NCBI GenBank assembly: GCA_977017575.1
Contig: CDRNVI010000002.1
Span: 186,001 to 250,000 of the forward strand
Reading direction: 5' to 3'
DNA: 64,000 nucleotides
Origin: Paramoeba atlantica
Taxonomy: Eukaryota > Protista > Discosea
Shown: piece after piece, positions 4,248 to 17,759 of the stretch
How the letters are laid out: each line of letters starts with the position of its first letter
Position numbering within the stretch: position 1 is the stretch's first letter
The notes under the pieces: model-generated
What the model saw: only the letters and a program-made list of their open reading frames with translations
Database searches by the model: none
Told to the model about the DNA's origin: nothing
Translations under genes and position numbers: made by a program

Positions 4248-5901
4248 CTGTCCCCCCTATTTAGTGTTGAGTGAAATTCGGGTCAGATTGAACGAAGTTT
4301 GCACACTTTGTAAAAAAAATTCTAAAAGTGACTAAATATCAACTAATTCCAAAAGAAAATCAAAATGATGCAGAAACGACGATTTCCGCACAAAACAGTG
4401 CCACATCCAACAAAACTTGTACCAGCGGGCTTAACCTCACTTAACCTCGTTTAACGGGAGACGTGTGACAAAGTTCATTTCAAGATACCCAACATCAAAT
4501 TCATCAACAAAACCCAACATCAAATTCATTCACCATGATTTCACCCGTAAACTGAGAACGTAAAAAAATACGGGCAAAGTTTACAAACTAGGCCCCGTTC
4601 CGGTTTAATGTACCTGTAGCTCGTTATTGTACCATGGGGGTACAATAAGTGGGAACGATTGGTTTAATTGTACCTCCCCTGTGCAACAGAGGGCGTCGCG
4701 CATTAATTTTTTGCCTTTTTACGGATTTTAATTTTAAAATTGATTACAATTTTACCATTTTTATCAGCGAAGACAAGAAAATAGAGAAGCCCCGGTGCCG
4801 CGAAGCGACGTAATTTTCGTTATTTTTCGGAAATTTTATTGTACCTGTAGCTACACCTGTACGTTACTTGTACGTACTTGTACCTGTACGTATTGTACCT
4901 GTAGCTAGTTATTGTACCGGGGGGAGACATTAACCCGGACGGATTGGATCTTTTCCCCTTAAAAAAGCGCGCCGCTTCGCGGCGTATTGTTTTCAAAACC
5001 CTGATTGTAGTATTTTTTCACTCGGATGGGGATACAGCTTTATGAACGCTGTGGGGCATTTGTATAAAGGCCTGTGGGGGGACAGCTTGTAAAGGGGGGT
5101 ACAGCTATGAAGGCTAGGTCTGGCAAGCAAAGTATAAAGGAGAAACAAACAAGGAAAGAATGAATACAACTCCGCTCACCAAAAATGGAACCAACGTTTA
5201 TGGAGGGACGAGTCTTGCATTTTGTTGATCGCAAGTATCACCCTGTATGATTAAAGCAAATTAAATGAGACAATGACGTCGTATACGTCATCATCCCTCG
5301 CAGATGTCACCTTCATTATGAAGAACGTATGAAGAACGTACGTATGAAGGCTTCATACGTGAAGTGAAATCTTCGTTGCTCTCAACAGGGCTCATCATAT
5401 AAAAAGGAGGATATTGTAAAAAAATTATGCATTATTGTGGAGGGTATATTAATTGTACATTTGATTTGTGTAATGCATACACCGTTCATATACAGCACCG
5501 TATACAGCGTACACCGTATTTTCACAGTAAGGCGGCTACAAACGTACTGTATGTACACAAACTGTAACGACTCCAAACTGTATGTACGGTAGCAAACTAA
5601 AAAAAGGCGACTACAAACTGTATGTACGGTAACAAACTAAAAAAAAACTACACTTTAAGCTACTTTGTACGTGTACAATCCATTTTTTTGGGCTAAAATA
5701 GACCTCGTTCGACCTCAAATGCAAAGCGCGGGTTCGGTGCGGGTTCGGTGATGCACACCCGCAGTCCCTCTAAAGTAGAAATCGGTAAACAATCACAAAT
5801 AACAAGCAAAGATAAGCTTCGTGGGGCCTGTACGCACCGAACCCAAAATTAAACACCAAATAGGAGGGGTTCAGCACTCAATAGTAAATAGGGGGGGGCA
5901 G
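4248..5901. mobile_element. Non-autonomous TA-flanked TIR element (Tc1/mariner-type), 1654 bp, with internal repeats
   Basis: Left end TA-CTGTCCCCCCTATTTAGTGTTGAGTG. The right end, reverse-complemented, is TA-CTGCCCCCCCCTATTTACTATTGAGTG. The interior has GTACCTGTAGCT repeats (4600-4920), GGG(G/A)TACAGCT repeats (5030-5110) and tandem repeats (5530-5650). No transposase ORF. Confidence 0.75.
5530..5650. repeat. Degenerate ~40-bp tandem repeat
   Basis: CTGTATGTACGGTA(G/A)CAAACTAAAAAAA...CTACA units, 2-3 copies. Confidence 0.7.
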
Positions 5902-5931
5902 TAATAAGAATTCTGAGTCCTAAAATGATTA

Positions 5932-6901
5932 CTCCCCCTGTCACTAATAATGATAACCTTAAAAATTATCATTCTATGTGGTGAAAACTCTTAAAAAACT
6001 ATCAACTTATTTTCATGCACGCAGGATGTTTTTACAAAATTTTTTATGTCTTAAAAAAACGTTTTTTGAACTACAAAATTATCAACCTATTTTCATGTTT
6101 TAGACCGTATTTTCGTATTTATTTTTCCATGACTTCTCGATCACTGAAAAAGAAGCGCCCATTAGATGAATTGGGCTCCATTGAAAAATTTACAAACTTT
6201 GGTGGACGACCATCTTCTAAGAGGTATAATAATCTCTCTAAAATAGTCTCAAAAAAATTATCATTCTTGAGGATTATCATTATCAGTATTAATGGACACT
6301 ATGCAGTTGTCCACTGCCATCCAGTGCCATGCGCTGCCATCCAGTGCCATCCAAAACAGAGATATGAGCGAGTATCGAAGGCTTTTTTTGTGTTTTGGAG
6401 GACCCAAGAACCTTCCATTTCCGCCGGATGTTGTAGGACAAGTGATGGCCATGATATGAAAAAGGGGCTAATGTCGGATTCAATTGTACTCATTTTTCAA
6501 AAACACGTCTTTTTCTTTCCTTTTGCAAAATAAGATATTTTCTCGGTCTCTTCTTGTGCGTGCTCTGTCATGCACATGTGCGGACCTGAGTTGAATTTTA
6601 AAGTGAAAGCATGATGGGGACACACCAACAATTTTGAAGATTTTTTGCGTTGTGACCGAAGAGAAATGTCCTCACGATCACGAGGGTGGGAAAGTTCGTG
6701 ACTCTGTTTTTAGTATTTGTTGGAGACGATGTAAGCACGTAAGTTTTAGAAAACAGTTGTCTCGATTACTTCCTTACTTTTATTCAGATGTGCGCCAACC
6801 GTCCCACAAATTTTAGTTTTGGGTACTTGTAGTACACAAGTACATAAAAATTAGTCATCCAGTGCCATCCAAATCTTCATAGTGTCCAATGACAGGGGGA
6901 G
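5932..6901. mobile_element. Stowaway-like MITE / Tc1-mariner deletion derivative, 970 bp
   Basis: Perfect 12-bp TIR CTCCCCCTGTCA / TGACAGGGGGAG. Flanks are TA (left) and TG (right, one mismatch from TA). Internal CCATCCAGTGCCAT repeats at 6315-6355 and 6856-6870. Confidence 0.7.
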
Positions 6902-8343: not shown

Positions 8344-9522
8344 TTAAATTTTATAATCTTGTGTATGTAGCAACGATTCATCCAGGACGGTCAAGTTATC
8401 CGTTTTCATTCCACAGTTCGGTGGGAGGCAGCACCATTTCAGTTTTCCAGTGGTATAGTCAAACATTACAGCTTTTGCAGCATCTTGTGTATTCTTGTAG
8501 TGTCGTCTCTTTGCAATTTTTGAAATAATATTTGCCGGGTCACTATTCGTTTCCTGATTGGACAGGCCCATTCGATAGTGTGTACAAATAGTTTCCGGTA
8601 AGAAATGACTGAGCACCTCCTCAGCATGGAGCTCTATATCGTTTAAATGGCGTTCAATATAGCTCCAAGGTCGATATATAGCGTCTAAACCACATAACGG
8701 TTGTCGCAGAAACTCAGCATTCTGGGGCAACGTTAGCAATGTAACTTCTTTGCTATGAGGTACACGACCCTTCGCTGCCTCCGAACTCACATGTACGCTT
8801 ACCCTTCCGCCTTGCATATCAGCTAAATTCTGAGTTAGCGTGCGAACGCCCACATTGGGGAATCCCGCAATGGTCACAAACACCTTTTGAAGTCCAAAAC
8901 GACGTTGAATCCATGCAACGACTGCTGTGGAATCATACAGTAGAACGCCAGCAAATTTTTCTACCTTTTCCAAATAGGAAACCCACGCTTGTGCGATAGA
9001 TGAAGGAACCAAGTTTTGCTTACTGAGGAGTAAAAGAACAGGAGTATTATTGTGAACTTCAGCAGCTAGGAGGAGCGTTGAGCTGACTCCTGATAACGGC
9101 GCCCGCGCATCGACGACAAGTATCAGCAACTGGCTCATATCCAGGCATTTTACCAGTTGAAGAGAAAAATCTTGATCTTCGAAGATTTTCTTTTTCCTTA
9201 CCGCCGCTTCCTGTCCTTTTTGGGAATCATTTTTTAATACACTCGCTTTGGAATTCGATACAACACTTTTGCCCTGCTTTTTCTCTTGTGCTCTGACATC
9301 CAACATGCCTTGTAAAAGATCTTCAACATTGCTAGTTTTCCTAGGGATTGACAGAATAGCGCGTTCAGCGTGAAAATTTTGCGGACGTGAATCCCGAATG
9401 CTTTTAGTTTTTCGAATCGCTCGTTTGACGTCTCGTCTATGCTCACGGACATGACGGAGCACTGAAAACTTCTTTTTCAGTGTTTGACGCTTCGAAAGGT
9501 CTCCTTTGCTTCGCTTCGGCAT
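8344..9522 (-). CDS. GNL3/nucleostemin/Nug1-like circularly permuted GTPase-fold ribosome biogenesis factor with degenerate G motifs
   Basis: Basic N-terminus 'SKRQTLKKKFSVLRHVREHRRDVKR' (Grn1/GNL3-like), VVDARAP, LLSKQNLVP and IAGFPNVGVRTL in permuted G4-G1 order. Confidence 0.8.
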   Translation of the reverse strand: MPKRSKGDLSKRQTLKKKFSVLRHVREHRRDVKRAIRKTKSIRDSRPQNFHAERAILSIPRKTSNVEDLLQGMLDVRAQEKKQGKSVVSNSKASVLKNDSQKGQEAAVRKKKIFEDQDFSLQLVKCLDMSQLLILVVDARAPLSGVSSTLLLAAEVHNNTPVLLLLSKQNLVPSSIAQAWVSYLEKVEKFAGVLLYDSTAVVAWIQRRFGLQKVFVTIAGFPNVGVRTLTQNLADMQGGRVSVHVSSEAAKGRVPHSKEVTLLTLPQNAEFLRQPLCGLDAIYRPWSYIERHLNDIELHAEEVLSHFLPETICTHYRMGLSNQETNSDPANIISKIAKRRHYKNTQDAAKAVMFDYTTGKLKWCCLPPNCGMKTDNLTVLDESLLHTQDYKI

Positions 9523-9709
9523 GATTAACTTGTAGAAAGAAAACTCAAAAAAGAGCCTACTTTAGGTAAAAGAAGAATTTATAAATGGTAAATTTATTTT
9601 ATAAATCGTAGCCATAGATTTTGCGGTGGTTGTATAACTACAGCTCTACCCTCAATTATTGAAAAAAAGTGAACAAAAACAGTGAAAATATAAAGAGGAA
9701 TACAGTAAT

Positions 9710-11881
9710 CATACATCTCCGCAGTACGGTACTTCGTACTAAACGTAGTACGGACCCCGTATTTCGTACTAGTACGTACTAAGTACCGTACTATCCGTAC
9801 TTAGTACGAAAGTCCGTACTTCATGCAGTTTGTCTAACAATTTCAAATAAAGAAATCACACTGAAGTAGTGTACCATGTGACGCTGAAGGGCTGCAACCT
9901 CTGTCATGAAGGGCATACATGCTAACACTCACTAAATAAAAGCGAATATAGAAGTAATTTAAAAGGAATATAGAAGAAGCGTACGGTGAACGCATAAAAA
10001 TTTGAATCAAAAGACACTCTATATTTATCACTATTTTCTCACTTGCTATGAACTAACGAATAGGTGATCGCCGACACCCGCCCAAAAAATGTATAAGAGA
10101 ACGGAAAGGAAAAGTGAAAGTGATCTAAGAACTTTTAGAAGCTATTTTCATTGAATATATAGAATACTGTATATATTTTTTTACAAAGGTATGCAATCAA
10201 CATCATACATTACAAGATTCCATTAATTTTAGTTTAATACTACGAAAAATCACCCTAAATTAGTCCAATGAGAGAGTGGCTACTCTGTAAAATTTTTGTC
10301 TTCACCTTCATCTGTATCTCTACTTTCGAGAAGATCAAACTCACCTTCCTCGGATGATTTATATTGCGTTTTCGGGCTATGAGTCACTCTTTTAATCTTA
10401 TTTAGGTTTCCACGCAAAAAAATCCGGTCAGCAATCACACGTGGAGGAAGTCTGGATTGTCGAGGACAGTACATATACGACAATATCGATAGCCATGAGT
10501 CACACTTTGTCACGAGAGGTGGCGTCCAAACGTAACGACGCGCGGCGTTAGCAAATAATGGGAAAAGTCTATCACCCGTAGTGCACCAGTAATCATACTC
10601 ATTACTGTGCACAGAGGGATCCCACTCAAAGTCAGTACAAGTGACGTACGCTTGCCATTCTATGTCAGTAATAGAAAATAAGGCGTTTCGCTCTGTTAGT
10701 GCTCCCAAACCTCGATCAAAAAGGTTGTTCGCCCGCTGCACACTGATACTCTTCATGTTATATGGGCGCCCGAATTCAGAAATGAATATTGGATCGAACC
10801 AAACAATGTCTTTCCAAAATTCCATGTTATGGTTTTTAGAAAGCCGGGACATATGATGCTTCAGCGCTTCTTTTAAACCTTCAGGCCCGACTCCTTCCTC
10901 TGAATCCTCGAATAACTGTTCCAAAGTTTCGGCAACGTGCGTCGCTGTAGGTTTCCCATTGAGGTCAGAAAATTTGTTCAATGCAACGAAGAGAATAGTA
11001 TATGTTCTCCCTTCATCCGATCGATGCCAGCGTCAACGGCAGCCCCAAAGTATGTATACTTATCGATGTCCGACTTGAGAATTTCCCATAGCTCATCGGC
11101 GAGAACAGATTCACATTCGTGAAGTTTTCCGGTCTTTTTGGGGAAAAAGGCTAGAAACTGTTCAATGGTAACCTTTGGAGGCCATTGCTCCAGGAGCGAC
11201 CGAACAAAAGTAAGAAATTGCTGCGAAGGAGTGCTCATGAGAGCATGCATGCTGGGTACTATTCGTGTGGCGTAAAGTTCGGCTTCCCTTTCACACGACA
11301 TAGCCATTTGAACAGCGTCAAGTTTCTCCTTATCAATTCGAAGATCGCAGTGCTTACGATGTTGTTGATAATGATTACGAGTCTTGCAATGAGATTCAAA
11401 ATGGCAGCCAGGGGCCATGCATTTGTAATGACATTCATGCCCCATACCGTCAACGGGCATTGCATCATGGTCGTGATGACAATTTGCCGAGCAACGTACG
11501 ACAGCAAAAAGGGGAATCGCCCCCTCTCGCATTAGAACGCTAGGCGGCGTTGCGTGATGAGCGCGAGAGACCGTTCTTTCGGGAGTTACCTCGCTTCCAT
11601 CCTGTTCACCTCGGCTTGACTTCCTAGACATGGTGCTGGAGAAAAGTGAATGAAAATTGAAAAGAAAATGCTATAAGTAACGGAATAATAAATTAGTTTA
11701 AGTAATGCGATCCCAACATTGTTTTCCAATGAAAAAGATGAGCTTTTCTTTAATTGAAATTCGTAGTCAAGGTCCCACTTTGGCATAAAATAATTTTCAA
11801 AATGTATGAAGTACGGACTTTCGTACTTAGTACGGATAGTACGGTACTTAGTACGTACTATCCGTACTAAGGAGATGTATG
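9710..11881 (-). mobile_element. hAT-type DNA transposon, 2172 bp, with CATAC termini and 6-bp TSD
   Basis: TSD AGTAAT at 9704-9709 and 11882-11887. Terminal IR CATACATCTCC/GGAGATGTATG. A 55-bp subterminal IR (9770-9824 vs 11806-11860) matches at 54/55. The element encloses a hAT-like transposase pseudogene. Confidence 0.88.
10280..11631 (-). pseudogene. hAT-family transposase, frameshifted and internally deleted
   Basis: The ORFs 10978-11631 and 10280-10981 join if 1 nt is restored at ~11030, giving 'AVDAWHRSDEGRTYTILF' (hAT D-x-W first catalytic motif). Also present: BED-like finger 'CMAPGC...TRNHYQQHRKH', 'PTATHVAETL' (cf. HTGENIA), 'WFDPIF' (cf. LDPRF) and a C-terminal dimerisation domain 'YW...FPLFANAARRYVWTP...CDSWLS...RQSRL...IFLRGN'. 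Confidence 0.82.
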
Positions 11882-12049
11882 AGTAATATAATAAAGGAAA
11901 AAAATATAAAAGGGGGCTCCCGTGGTCCAAAATTGAAAAAAAAATTGAAAAAAATGCGGGGTCTAGGGTGGGCCGGGGGAGGGCATACCGCACGAAATAT
12001 TTTTTGAAAAAAAACCCGCAGAAGGTGCAGCCGGTGTCTTTCCCCTATA

Positions 12050-12120
12050 TTGTAGTATTTTGATAGTTTATATTGTAGTTTATATTGTAGTACAGTTTAT
12101 ATTGTAGTATTTTGATAGTT
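12050..12120. repeat. Short tandem repeat (TTTATATTGTAG-type units)
   Basis: TATTGTAG repeated 4 times with GTTTA/TTTTGATAG spacers. Confidence 0.7.
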
Positions 12121-12377
12121 TCGGACCTACACTAGCTTTCTATACTATACTATACTAGCCTATACTAGCTTTCTACGCCGTTGTTTTCGCCAGATATCCC
12201 TTCTTCGATCCGTGGTGTGCCCCCCAAAATGACCCATTTTTGATTAAAAAAGGTAAAAAAGTATTTTTCGGACCACATGGGGCCTTGTTGTGTCGAAAGA
12301 ATGGTGTGGTTGGAGTCGCATTCTCTACCCAATACGTTCGGTAGGCTTAAATTCACTCCTACAAGTCATTTCCCACA

Positions 12378-14816: not shown

Positions 14817-16292
14817 GGTCGTAAAACGTATGCCCTATACGCCTCCTGTGGATCTCACGAGCCAAAACTCTCTTACAGGGGGGTAAATGAAAAAAGTATA
14901 TGAAAAAGCATATGAAAAAAGTCATAGATCTTGGTCGTTAAAACGAACATCAATTGAACTCAGAAACTTTTGGTGTAATCATGCAGACACGGGTATTGAA
15001 AACTGGTGGATATAAAGTGTAGGTTTCTCATCCCTGGGTGGGAAACTATATTTCACCTACGACGTAACATACCTATGTGTTCTATGAACACTTGTGTGTG
15101 TTCAGTAGTTCTATGGTTCAATGAACACTTTTATGAACCAATAGAACACTTTTTCGATTTTTTTCCTGGCGCACAAACAATTTTTTTTGAAGCTTTGTTT
15201 CATTCAAATGGCCCCAGATGGTACTACACGACCTAGATCCTCACGTACATGTAGGTACATGGCAGAATAGGTGGTGCGAGTCTGTGCCATCGATATGATT
15301 CCAGCGTCAAGGGGGCCACGAAGAGGCCCCAACCCCCAGTTAGGTTGGTCCTAACACGTCCTAACACGTGTTAGGCGTTTAATCAATTCGGCACACAAAC
15401 GTCTTTAATGCACATAATGTGTTCACAGTGCAAAAAGAATGTTTAGTGGAAATGACGACAACGAAGATGAGGAAAAAAATTCAGGTTTTTTCTTTGGGGA
15501 AAAAAGTCCCCTTTCACCCACAAGTGTATCGAGTACTTTCTTTTTTTCATCTGGACCCAGGTTTCTATTCAGAAGCAGGCCATGAAAGCACTCCAAGTCT
15601 TTCGCTGCTTTGTTAGCGTGGCTATCATATTCTTCAAGTGAAGAGCATTGCTTTTGTATTGAGCCTTTCGTGACGATAAACACCCTCCACCATGGAAAGC
15701 GTTCATAAACCCCACCCAATGAAAAGTGACCCACCACTTTTTCTTTCGTACAAGCATCCGTTTGAGCTGATTTTTGTAGCATTTTGCAGATCTCAACATA
15801 AAGACTTTGCGCGTGAAGAAACGAAACAAAAAGAAGCGAATACGTATATTTTAGAGAAGAATTTCCATTTAGTCACCTTTTCTCCGTTCTATTTTATACA
15901 CTGCTTAAGGCGAGAGTCAAAACTTAATACCGTATTGTCGATAGGGTATTTACGTTTTGGGGCAAACGAGACCACGCTTTTTGTACACATCGGATAAGTA
16001 AAGGCTTATACATGTATATGAAGGCTAATATAGACCAGACGTTTTCTATGGGAAAGGTCTGGTGAATTGGGGGGGGGCAATTTTTCAATACATCTTTCAT
16101 TCTATTTGTAATATACTCCTTAGAGGCATGGGCGGTGTGTGCCGTAGCCCCACCTTTTTGGGGGAAAGGTACCTTTTTCAGCGTCTCTATGATAGACGAG
16201 CTCCTGATAGACGAGTCAGAGTCCAGAATAACTAAGTGTTTCCACCCTACTCCTATGGCACCCCAAACTTGGCATCTCGGCGCCCAGCGTAC

Positions 16293-16395
16293 TGGTTCCC
16301 CATGTAATAGATTGGGGTGGTTCCCCATGGAAGCAAATTAGGGTGGTTCCCCATGGAAATAGATTAGGGTGGTTCCCCATGGAAATGGATTGGGG
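16293..16395. repeat. 4 tandem copies of a 25-26-bp unit (fifth copy at 17094-17121)
   Basis: TGGTTCCCCATG(G/T)AA..(G/A)ATT(G/A)GGG units, which are amplified transposase coding sequence (MGNHPNLLHGEP). Confidence 0.85.
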
Positions 16396-16408
16396 TGCAA
16401 ATGGATTA

Positions 16409-16492
16409 CAGTGTTATATTTTATTACGGTATTATTTAATTACGCTTTAAGGTAAGCGTAATTAAATAATACCGTAATTAAATACAACACTG
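16409..16492. mobile_element. 84-bp fold-back mini-MITE with Tc1-type CAGTG ends
   Basis: TA-CAGTGTT...AACACTG-TA. Inner perfect 25-bp arms ATTACGGTATTATTTAATTACGCTT around a 6-nt loop. Confidence 0.8.
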
Positions 16493-17759
16493 TAACCGTA
16501 ATGTCATCCACTCGTAAATTACTAATTTTTGAACACACTTTTTGAATAATTTTTAAGCGCCCAAGCCATTAGATTCGTCTGTGATCATTTTATGAAGGCT
16601 TGTGTTTCGTATGAAAGTGAGGCCGATGGTATATTATTTATGTTTCGCATGAAAGTGGATCGGCCTTCGATACCAAAAAGGAGAAAAACAACTGACAACT
16701 CGGAAAATGAGGAGAATTCACAGCCTTTATGGTCTTTGAAGGCATTACTCAAAATGAAATCCCTTGGAAATGGGCCAGCGCGAGACATTCCGGCATCCAA
16801 GCGCGAAGCTGAGGTACGAAGTGTGCTTCGAGGTAAGGTTGCGAGAACTGGCGGTAATAGGAAACCGTCTAAGTAAGGAAAGAATTGATGGAATTGCATC
16901 TTGGCAAATTTTGAATACCTTGAGGATTATTTGTAGGTTATGGGAAAAATATTGTTTGTTTGTACCGTATCAGACACATATAAACTCTGAACTTGGAAGT
17001 CATAGATGAAAGCTTTCAAGGTGAAAGTGTTAAGCTTTTTAACCGACTTTAAGTCGGTCTTATTGGATATTGGATTTATTTTTGTATTTGGATTGGTTCC
17101 CCATGTAATCGATTGGGGTGGCTTCCCATTTTTCTTCGACGGGCACGAAAGGTTCCTGTGGGACCTCGTCCTCTCATTAGAAATTGTTGAGGGTAATAGA
17201 TAATGCTTGACTAAATGAGGGAAACAATAGTTTTTTGCAACAACAACAACAAAATATTTTGAAATGAGAAATGCATTACGTTCGGCGAGTACAAAAAAAG
17301 CTGCCACGCGTACTAAGAGAGAACCTCATACCGCGGCATTCTTATACTGCATAGCTAGGGCATGTGTAATCACTTGGATATGCGCAAAACAAAAAAGTTT
17401 TATGAAAAATAATCAACATGTTCGTGGGATGTGTACCTCCCCAAAAAGTGTTCAATGCGTTCTATGTGTTCAATGAACAAAAAAAAGTGTTCATAGAACA
17501 CATAGGTATGACGTAATGTGATCCTTTGGTGGGTTTGGTGGATGTGGTCAGGATTTTTCCTGCAGTAAGGCGGGGGGACCTCTTCACATCCAGGGGCTTT
17601 CACCCAAGTGCGGATATCAGGCCGTGAGAAGAGAGTCTGAAACTCCCAACGTAGGACGCGTAGTTCCTATGAATTGTCACTCACGCGATAGCGCAACTGC
17701 GTTTTCCGCGTTTTGAATGCAGAAGAAACTGATTTTGAATGCAGAAGGGAATTTGACCG

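What the first reader, a model, noticed from the sequence alone, without database searches (positions are those of the whole stretch)
9704..11887. hAT-derived transposon with atypical CATAC ends and a 6-bp TSD
Seen: both ends are intact (AGTAAT TSD, 11-bp TIR, 55-bp subterminal IR at 54/55 built from GTAC palindromes). The enclosed transposase has a BED-like finger, a D-x-W motif restored by one base at ~11030, an LDPRF-like motif and the hAT C-terminal domain. The second-Asp region and most of the insertion domain appear deleted, and the catalytic 'SERxFS' position reads 'CDSWLS'. Known: canonical hAT elements make 8-bp TSDs and start (C/T)A(A/G); shorter-TSD hAT subgroups are rare. Trypanosomatids are generally held to lack DNA transposons, and Merlin is the type I recall reported in bodonids and Perkinsela. 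Inference: this may be an undescribed hAT-related lineage in a kinetoplastid, and the near-identical IRs imply recent mobility.
Basis: partly seen in the sequence, partly recalled or inferred. Interest (0 to 1): 0.78.

Follow-up and report, generated by a model that had tools for sequence, protein, structure and literature searches.

The report
Deleted copy of DDD-type hAT transposon
A 2.2-kb jumping gene in a trypanosome-related protist is a broken, non-autonomous copy of a hAT-type cut-and-paste transposon; its lineage duplicates 6 instead of 8 target bases and carries aspartate where hAT enzymes normally have a catalytic glutamate, and an intact master copy lies elsewhere in the genome.

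Summary
The element is real. Window 9710-11881 has perfect 11-bp inverted ends (CATACATCTCC) and a 6-bp duplication, AGTAAT. Five other copies of the repeat it landed in carry a single AGTAAT at that point, so they serve as empty sites.

It is a deletion derivative. A 3142-bp master copy on another contig encodes an uninterrupted 776-aa protein. The window copy lacks 979 bp of it, with 4-bp microhomology at the junction and a frame shift. The loss removes the second Asp, the CxxH motif and the TRW tryptophan.

The protein has no Pfam hit, but hAT membership holds on four counts:
- Same-lineage paralogues and distant relatives pass Dimer_Tnp_hAT.
- The family profile hits Hermes at E = 1e-8.
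- A confident model (pLDDT 85.6) aligns to Hermes at Z 23.7; the next fold scores 11.
- C317/H320 and W475 are conserved.

The Hermes glutamate position is Asp in 22 of 23 relatives, including the prokinetoplastid Papus. Four further families in this genome share CATA(C/G) ends and 6-bp duplications. Canonical hATs in the same genome have CAGGG ends, 8-bp duplications and Glu.

hAT elements with 6-bp duplications (hAT6) are already described from animals. The Asp triad and a kinetoplastid host were not found in the papers searched. The scan has already noted this lineage on other DNA of this genome (s1-403570).

The parts
9704..9709 (.). Left target-site duplication, AGTAAT
   Evidence: Paralogous empty sites carry a single AGTAAT.
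9710..9720 (+). Terminal inverted repeat CATACATCTCC. This is the end downstream of the transposase gene.
   Evidence: The same 11-mer ends the other copies.
9710..9832 (.). Subterminal region packed with AGTACG/CGTACT motifs (12 GTAC). Presumed transposase binding sites.
   Evidence: motif counts; inverted repeats I1, I6, I10. The binding role is inferred by analogy with the subterminal repeats of Ac and Hermes.
10280..10981 (-). C-terminal remnant of the transposase, equal to master residues 544-776. It holds WFDPIF (10784-10801) and the hAT C-terminal region with CDSWLS (10487-10504). It is out of frame with the N-terminal remnant.
   Evidence: (94% identity to master residues 538-776).
10994..10997 (.). 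Deletion junction with 4-bp microhomology AATA. 979 bp of the master copy are missing, about codons 213-538, including D267, C317/H320 and W475.
   Evidence: Residue mapping.
10978..11631 (-). N-terminal remnant of the transposase: master residues 1-212 plus 5 out-of-frame codons. It holds the Cys/His finger (11347-11424) and the first catalytic Asp in AAVDAGID (11020-11043).
   Evidence: (96% identity to master residues 1-215).
11798..11881 (.). Subterminal AGTACG/CGTACT repeat region (8 GTAC) at the end upstream of the transposase gene.
11871..11881 (+). Terminal inverted repeat GGAGATGTATG.
11882..11887 (.). Right target-site duplication, AGTAAT.
9621..9709 (.). Left half of the high-copy host repeat into which the element inserted. 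It is context, not part of the element.
   Evidence: about 1000 first-look candidates, and most of the 40 scored copies are 96-98% identical, most of them ending at 9709.
11882..12340 (.). Right half of the same host repeat. It is context, not part of the element.
   Evidence: and for contiguity in five uninterrupted copies.

Best explanation
Window 9710-11881 is a non-autonomous, internally deleted (Ds-like) copy of a 3142-bp cut-and-paste transposon of the hAT superfamily. The master copy (G000:C23:294969-298110) encodes a 776-aa transposase with an N-terminal Cys/His finger, a split RNase H-like catalytic core, a large helical insertion domain and a hAT-type C-terminal region. Its candidate catalytic residues are D200, D267 and D704.

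Inferred from Hermes and Ac: the transposase binds the GTAC-rich subterminal repeats and cuts at the CATAC ends, with W475 assisting hairpin formation on the flanking DNA. It then joins the ends to a target cut with a 6-bp stagger, which gives the 6-bp duplication.

The window copy keeps both ends but lost 979 bp of coding sequence, probably through interrupted gap repair at a 4-bp microhomology. It cannot make transposase and could move only if the master copy supplies the enzyme.

The element belongs to a distinct hAT lineage that combines CATA(C/G) termini, 6-bp duplications and Asp in place of the catalytic Glu. Shown here: the structure, the deletion, the empty sites, the homology and fold, and residue conservation. 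Inferred: the catalytic role of D704, the binding role of the repeats, and mobilisation in trans.
For: Ends and duplication:
-.
- Five paralogous empty sites with a single AGTAAT.

Master copy and deletion:
- Intact 776-aa frame.
- 97.4% and 98.5% identity of the two arms, and a 979-bp deletion at AATA microhomology.

hAT membership:
- Relatives P0006, P0080 and P0093 exceed, and P0096 just reaches, the Dimer_Tnp_hAT cut-off.
- Same-lineage paralogues L045 and L046 reach 29-30 bits over the full model.
- The family profile hits Hermes at E = 1.1e-8 over about 325 residues, pairing TRW with TRW and CDSvlS with SERTFS.
- The AlphaFold model has pLDDT 85.6.
- The ten best Foldseek hits are all Hermes, at probability 1.00.
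- VIA-align gives Z 23.7, 403 residues and 3.5 A to Hermes; the next fold, integrase cores, scores Z 11.
- Protein-atlas neighbours are hAT, BED and DUF659 clusters.

Residue conservation: D200 26/26, D267 25/27, C317 28/30, H320 29/29, W475 28/32, D704 22/23. The same pattern holds in paralogues, Papus and metagenome members.

Lineage signature: CATA(C/G) ends and 6-bp duplications in five families at 33-47% protein identity to the master transposase.

Internal control: canonical hATs of the same genome have CAGGG ends, 8-bp duplications and C-E-R-x-F-S.
Against: - The 776-aa protein and both window remnants have no Pfam hit and no PDB sequence hit on their own.
- Profile-profile comparison with this genome's canonical hATs is weak: probability 19%, E = 0.0012, C-terminal region only.
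- No coordinates of the model were available, so I could not measure whether D704 sits beside D200 and D267.
- All complete copies of this family occur on both haplotype contigs, and the window copy is 100% identical between them. No hemizygous insertion demonstrates very recent movement.
- Only one allele of the master copy is open; its twin has a TAG.
- No transposition has been observed.
Confidence: 0.88

Rival explanations
1. The lineage is a separate superfamily that only resembles hAT, for example a relative of IS3EU or Dada, which also make 6-bp duplications, or of P or Kolobok. It would then not be a hAT member.
For: - No direct Pfam hit for the 776-aa protein.
- 6-bp duplication, a third terminal base T, and Asp instead of Glu all depart from the hAT norm.
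- hhalign against this genome's canonical hATs is weak.
Against: - Hermes is by far the best structural match, Z 23.7 over 403 residues. The P element and ISCth4 score about 10 or appear only with Foldseek E > 0.01.
- The profile hit to Hermes reaches E = 1e-8.
- Lineage members pass Pfam Dimer_Tnp_hAT over the full model.
- CxxH and TRW, typical of hAT, are conserved.
- The IS3EU ends reported in PMC12730594 (TAYGG..CCRTA) differ from these.
Confidence: 0.05
2. Asp at the third position marks catalytically dead or domesticated proteins, and the elements are old relics rather than a working D-D-D transposase lineage.
For: - Asp replaces the Hermes E572 equivalent.
- No hemizygous insertion of this family was found.
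- One master allele carries a stop.
Against: - Asp is conserved in 22 of 23 relatives that are otherwise 17-49% identical, together with both other Asp residues, CxxH and W. That pattern indicates selection on an active site.
- More than 20 paralogous frames of over 500 codons in this genome have no stop.
- Copies have perfect ends and exact 6-bp duplications in five families.
- The window copy is 97-98.5% identical to its master and lies in a young repeat.
- From general knowledge, D-D-D triads work in piggyBac and mariner.
Confidence: 0.1
3. The window copy is still autonomous, and the two reading frames are joined by a frameshift or a sequencing error.
For: The two open frames of 217 and 233 codons overlap by 4 nt.
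Against: - Alignment to the master copy shows 979 bp missing between them, which removes about 326 codons holding D267, C317/H320 and W475.
- The haplotype twin on C12 is 100% identical, which argues against a read error.
Confidence: 0.01

Closest known systems
Hermes transposase (hAT superfamily; PDB 2BW3, 4D1Q, 6DWW/6DWZ, 8EDG/8SJD)
   Same: - The fold matches: an RNase H-like core split by a large helical insertion domain, plus a C-terminal region (Z 23.7, 403 residues).
- The profile hit reaches E = 1e-8.
- The TRW tryptophan, a CxxH-type motif and two Asp residues are conserved.
- The element ends begin with CA.
   Different: - Identity is about 10-12%.
- The S-E-R-x-F-S glutamate (E572 from my own knowledge of Hermes) is replaced by Asp in C-D-S-x-x-S.
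- The duplication is 6 bp instead of 8 bp.
- The ends read CATAC instead of CAGAG.
- The subterminal motifs are different.
hAT6 group (Kapitonov and Jurka 2007, Repbase Reports, as cited in PMC12730594; hAT6-1_NV, hAT6-1_SP, hAT6-2_SP)
   Same: These are hAT transposons that make 6-bp target-site duplications.
   Different: - The described members come from a sea anemone and a sea urchin and branch beside Blackjack-type animal hATs.
- No sequences were available here. Their third catalytic residue, their termini and their relationship to this lineage could not be tested.
Ac/Ds of maize (autonomous element and internal-deletion derivatives)
   Same: A master copy with an intact transposase coexists with shorter copies that keep both ends and the subterminal repeats but lack internal coding sequence. 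Here those are a 2172-bp and a 720-bp derivative.
   Different: The resemblance is in behaviour only. Mobilisation in trans is inferred, not shown. Ac makes 8-bp duplications and has a D-D-E triad (my own knowledge).
Canonical hAT elements of the same genome (L051-L054)
   Same: They share the host genome, the Dimer_Tnp_hAT domain and similar element sizes of 2.4-3.4 kb.
   Different: They have CAGGG termini, 8-bp duplications (TCCAAAAG, TTTTGTAC) and C-E-R-x-F-S with Glu.
Merlin relics of Bodo saltans and Perkinsela (PMC8101967)
   Same: They are DNA transposon sequences in kinetoplastids.
   Different: They belong to another superfamily (IS1595-like). They were reported without detectable inverted repeats or duplications and were judged inactive. 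The present family has exact ends, duplications, empty sites and an intact gene.

Membership tests
hAT superfamily | Transposase fold: an RNase H-like core interrupted by a large all-helical insertion domain, as in Hermes | tested here: met
   - AlphaFold model of the master protein: pLDDT 85.6.
- The ten best Foldseek hits are Hermes at probability 1.00.
- VIA-align: Z 23.7, 403 residues, 3.5 A; the next fold scores Z 11.
hAT superfamily | C-terminal hAT dimerisation region (Pfam PF05699) | tested here: met
   - The query itself is below detection.
- Same-lineage paralogues L045 and L046 score 29.1 and 30.5 bits over model positions 2-84, against a cut-off of 21.4.
- Relatives P0006, P0080 and P0093 exceed the cut-off and P0096 just reaches it.
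- The family profile aligns this region to Hermes.
hAT superfamily | D-D-E catalytic triad, with the Glu in S-E-R-x-F-S | tested here: not met
   - Both Asp residues are present: D200 in 26/26 and D267 in 25/27.
- The Glu position is Asp in 22/23 relatives.
- This is a conservative acidic replacement, so I treat it as a lineage variant and not as grounds for exclusion. Canonical hATs of the same genome keep Glu.
hAT superfamily | Conserved CxxH motif and the insertion-domain tryptophan (TRW) | tested here: met
   C317 in 28/30, H320 in 29/29, W475 in 28/32. TRW pairs with the Hermes TRW.
hAT superfamily | 8-bp target-site duplication (typical; subgroups with 5, 6 and 7 bp are accepted) | tested here: not met
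   The duplication is 6 bp in 11 insertions, and in five empty sites for the window copy. hAT5, hAT6 and hAT7 are recognised exceptions.
hAT superfamily | Short inverted ends beginning (C/T)A(A/G) | tested here: inconclusive
   The 11-bp ends begin CA but continue with T, as CATAC or CATAG. The consensus itself is recalled from memory, not from a tool.
hAT superfamily | N-terminal BED-type zinc finger | tested here: inconclusive
   A conserved C-x2-4-C ... H-x3-4-C/H cluster is present and is modelled as strands followed by a helix. There is no Pfam zf-BED hit. The domain was not folded and searched on its own.
hAT6 group (Repbase) | 6-bp target-site duplication | tested here: met
hAT6 group (Repbase) | Phylogenetic clustering with hAT6-1_NV and hAT6-1/2_SP | not testable with these tools
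   Only a Newick tree without sequences was available, and Repbase and Dfam were not on hand. I therefore do not file the element as a hAT6 member.
IS3EU (another superfamily with 6-bp duplications) | IS3-like transposase and TAYGG..CCRTA ends | tested here: not met
   The best fold and profile matches are Hermes. The ends are CATAC..GTATG. IS3EU features are taken from PMC12730594.

The most novel reading that the evidence does not exclude
The CATA-ended, 6-bp-duplicating, D-D-D elements form a deep, previously undescribed hAT clade native to kinetoplastids. At least five families with open transposase frames occur in this genome, and an expressed homologue occurs in the prokinetoplastid Papus ankaliazontas. 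On this reading the clade is independent of the animal hAT6 group, and the Glu-to-Asp switch goes with a target stagger two bases narrower. These would also be the first kinetoplastid DNA transposons with demonstrable ends, duplications, empty sites and intact genes.
Probability: 0.45. Interest if true: 0.65.

Novelty: new variant of a known kind. Interest (0 to 1): 0.55.

Why it matters
The papers I could search report only inactive Merlin relics as DNA transposons in kinetoplastids, and none in trypanosomatids (PMC8101967, PMC12278014). This genome carries a structurally complete hAT system: a master gene, deletion derivatives, exact ends and empty sites.

The lineage also offers a natural experiment on hAT chemistry and geometry. 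Elements with Asp, 6-bp duplications and CATA ends sit in the same genome as elements with Glu, 8-bp duplications and CAGGG ends. That pairing makes two questions testable: what sets the target stagger, and whether the third acidic residue is interchangeable.

The window copy itself is an ordinary Ds-like derivative.

Tried and rejected
- Pfam on the two window reading frames and on the intact 776-aa protein gave nothing relevant. phmmer against PDB sequences also gave nothing.
- The word-based protein search found only P0001. I first took its locus L037 (CATAC ends, duplication ATTCTA) as an independent organism. Its flank is 100% identical to G000:C60, so it is the same organism and counts only as a paralogous family.
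The ends and duplications of the distant metagenomic relatives could not be checked.
- hhalign of the family profile against this genome's four canonical hATs was weak: probability 19%, C-terminal region only.
- The supplement of PMC12730594 holds a tree with hAT6 names but no sequences. The hAT6 third residue remains unknown to me.
- Empty sites in related strains could not be sought, because the genome search holds no relatives of this genome. I used paralogous empty sites instead.
- The copy at C34/C69 gave no clean 6-bp duplication; its left end is mutated to TATAC.
- The simple inverted-repeat finder found no convincing ends for L047 and L049, and the outermost ends of L046 were not resolved.
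- No reading-frame repair was done. The natural intact copy was used instead.
Full report
**The observation**

The region reads as described. AGTAAT (9704-9709) is followed by CATACATCTCC, and GGAGATGTATG is followed by AGTAAT (11882-11887). The 11-bp ends are perfectly complementary. A 63-nt subterminal inverted repeat at 95% lies just inside them, with arms 9770-9832 and 11798-11860. GTAC occurs 12 and 8 times in the two terminal 125-bp stretches, against 0.46 per 125 bp in the interior, mostly as AGTACG or CGTACT.

On the minus strand there are two open frames of 217 and 233 codons that overlap by 4 nt in different frames.

**Proof of insertion**

The element sits in a high-copy repeat. Its left flank from about 9621 and its right flank up to about 12340 each gave about 1000 first-look candidates in the genome.

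In five uninterrupted copies of that repeat (L038-L042), the two flanks align contiguously and overlap by exactly one AGTAAT. These paralogous empty sites fix both boundaries and the 6-bp duplication.

**What the window copy is**

A whole-genome search finds a twin on contig C12 that is 100% identical. I take it to be the other haplotype, because KMP-11 and MRP genes also occur in pairs on paired contigs. The search also finds longer copies.

G000:C23:294969-298110 (L031:506-3647) is a 3142-bp element with the same ends, a 6-bp duplication ATAATA and an uninterrupted 776-codon frame. Its twin on C14 has one TAG.

The window copy aligns to it at 97.4% (left arm) and 98.5% (right arm). It lacks master positions 1281-2259, which is 979 bp, at a 4-bp AATA microhomology (window 10994-10997). 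Because 979 is 3 x 326 + 1, this single deletion explains both the missing domain and the frame change.

- Retained: residues 1-212, with the Cys/His finger and the first Asp in V-D-A-G-I-D at 11020-11043.
- Retained out of frame: residues 544-776.
- Lost: D267, C317/H320 and W475.

Other members of this family, counted per haplotype:
- a 720-bp derivative with duplication TAAAGA;
- a copy disrupted by a Tc1/mariner-like element;
- a subfamily copy at 72-77% identity carrying nested pogo-like and Tc1-like elements, with duplication TTTTGC;
- about a dozen solo ends.

**Superfamily**

The 776-aa protein has no Pfam hit and no PDB sequence hit. The exhaustive HMMER search found 119 relatives, mostly metagenomic fragments.

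Several lines then converge on hAT:
- Long relatives P0006, P0080 and P0093 exceed, and P0096 just reaches, the Dimer_Tnp_hAT cut-off at the position aligned to query residues about 650-735.
- A profile of 56 relatives (A1) hits Hermes transposase at E = 1.1e-8 over about 325 residues.
- With that alignment AlphaFold gives pLDDT 85.6 and pTM 0.77.
- The ten best Foldseek PDB hits are all Hermes at probability 1.00.
- VIA-align gives Z 23.7, 403 residues and 3.5 A, against Z 11 for the next fold, retroviral integrase cores.
- Paralogues of the same lineage in this genome (L045, L046; 33-34% identical to the query) match Dimer_Tnp_hAT over the whole model at 29-30 bits.
- The protein-atlas neighbours are hAT, BED and DUF659 clusters.

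I conclude that the element belongs to the hAT superfamily.

**The departures from canonical hAT are lineage-wide**

In the Hermes alignment, TRW pairs with TRW and the Hermes S-E-R-T-F-S pairs with C-D-S-x-l-S.

Conservation across the relatives:

| Residue | Conserved in |
|---|---|
| D200 | 26/26 |
| D267 | 25/27 |
| C317 | 28/30 |
| H320 | 29/29 |
| W475 | 28/32 |
| D704 | 22/23 |

The same Asp is seen in all paralogues with a C-terminus, in the EukProt protein of Papus ankaliazontas (P0141, 795 aa) and in distant metagenome members.

Five families in this genome, including the window's own, share the end and duplication signature; the four others are 33-47% identical to the master transposase. 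They begin CATAC or CATAG and have 6-bp duplications: ATAATA, AAAATA, AAGAAT and AAACTT, TAATAT, TATTTA. ATTCTA at L037 belongs to the AAAATA family. A second element in this window has ACGTAA at 15062-15067 and 17511-17516.

An internal control comes from other hAT elements of the same genome (L051-L054). They have CAGGG ends, 8-bp duplications (TCCAAAAG, TTTTGTAC) and C-E-R-x-F-S with Glu.

The three traits therefore travel together: end sequence, stagger and third acidic residue. Each family also has its own subterminal motif: GTAC-based here, GGGTAAAT, TTCGACGTCGAA or ATTACCAC in others. This fits co-evolution with the N-terminal DNA-binding region, but that link is inferred.

**Mechanism**

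I infer hAT-type cut-and-paste. The transposase binds the subterminal repeats, cleaves at the CATAC ends with the D200/D267/D704 site, and integrates with a 6-bp stagger. Hairpin formation on the flanking DNA, assisted by W475, is taken from Hermes.

The window copy cannot encode this enzyme. It is a Ds-like passenger whose ends match the master's, so it could be mobilised in trans. The microhomology at the junction fits interrupted gap repair after an excision.

None of these steps has been observed. No hemizygous insertion of this family was found, so 'recent' rests on three facts:
- 97-98.5% identity to the master copy;
- intact duplications;
- a host repeat whose own copies are 92-98% alike.

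**Host**

The genome encodes KMP-11 (151 bits) and the editing protein MRP (32.8 bits), each on two haplotype contigs. All large frames of the window lie on one strand.

The window's STT3 is 46-51% identical to its best named hits, which are Papus, Neobodo, Trypanoplasma, Trypanosoma and Leishmania. This is a kinetoplastid-type protist without a close sequenced relative. Nothing shows it to be a trypanosomatid.

**Comparison with the literature**

hAT groups with 5-, 6- and 7-bp duplications are named hAT5, hAT6 and hAT7. The hAT6 entries in the published tree are from Nematostella and a sea urchin and branch beside Blackjack. The 6-bp duplication alone is therefore not new.

I found no paper reporting a hAT lineage with Asp at the third position. 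For kinetoplastids the searched papers report only Merlin relics without ends or duplications, and no DNA transposons in 57 trypanosomatid genomes.

Whether the lineage is already in Repbase or Dfam could not be checked.

**Earlier notes of this scan**

Earlier notes describe the same lineage on other DNA of this genome (s1-403570, s1-370095, s1-386374) and the second element in this window (s1-396267). I re-derived their claims independently here.

**Limits**

- No model coordinates were available.
- L037/P0001 proved to be the same organism.
- The joined two-frame protein of the window copy was never built or searched. The natural intact copy made that unnecessary.

Noticed in passing
window 15062-17516: A second element of the same lineage but a different family. 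Its ends are CATACCTATGTGTTC...GAACACATAGGTATG and its duplication is ACGTAA (15062-15067 and 17511-17516). I saw no transposase frame inside it. It is already noted by the scan as s1-396267.
   Followed up: partly
window 9621-9709 and 11882-12340: The host of the insertion is a very abundant repeat: about 1000 first-look candidates, with copies 92-98% alike. Its first 41 bases end in ...CAATTATTG, which resembles a spliced-leader exon. It may be one of the leader-headed retroelements noted elsewhere in this genome.
   Followed up: no
L033:2126-3180 (G000:C34) and L035:2564-3571, 5182-6285 (G000:C10): Tc1/mariner-like (DDE_3, HTH_Tnp_Tc3_2) and pogo-like (DDE_1) transposase genes are nested inside copies of this hAT family. 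The genome therefore holds several DNA transposon superfamilies.
   Followed up: partly
G000:C54:595465-659793 and G000:C99:50096-77178: Five solo ends on C54, and three on C99, read CATACATCTCCCTAGTACGG in one orientation each. Several lie about 6.5 kb apart, as if a segment holding one transposon end had been tandemly duplicated.
   Followed up: no
G000:C63:143135-148298 versus G000:C20:294692-295973: One haplotype copy of a truncated family member is split by about 3.9 kb of extra DNA, while the other haplotype is uninterrupted. This may be a hemizygous nested insertion of another element.
   Followed up: no
L051-L054 (G000:C48, C37, C39, C79): Canonical hAT elements with CAGGG ends, 8-bp duplications and open frames of about 590-680 codons occur in the same genome. 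Two show weak DUF659 matches.
   Followed up: partly
window 8344-9522 (-): The neighbouring 392-codon frame has no Pfam match at E <= 0.01. It ends 182 bp from the element's left duplication.
   Followed up: no
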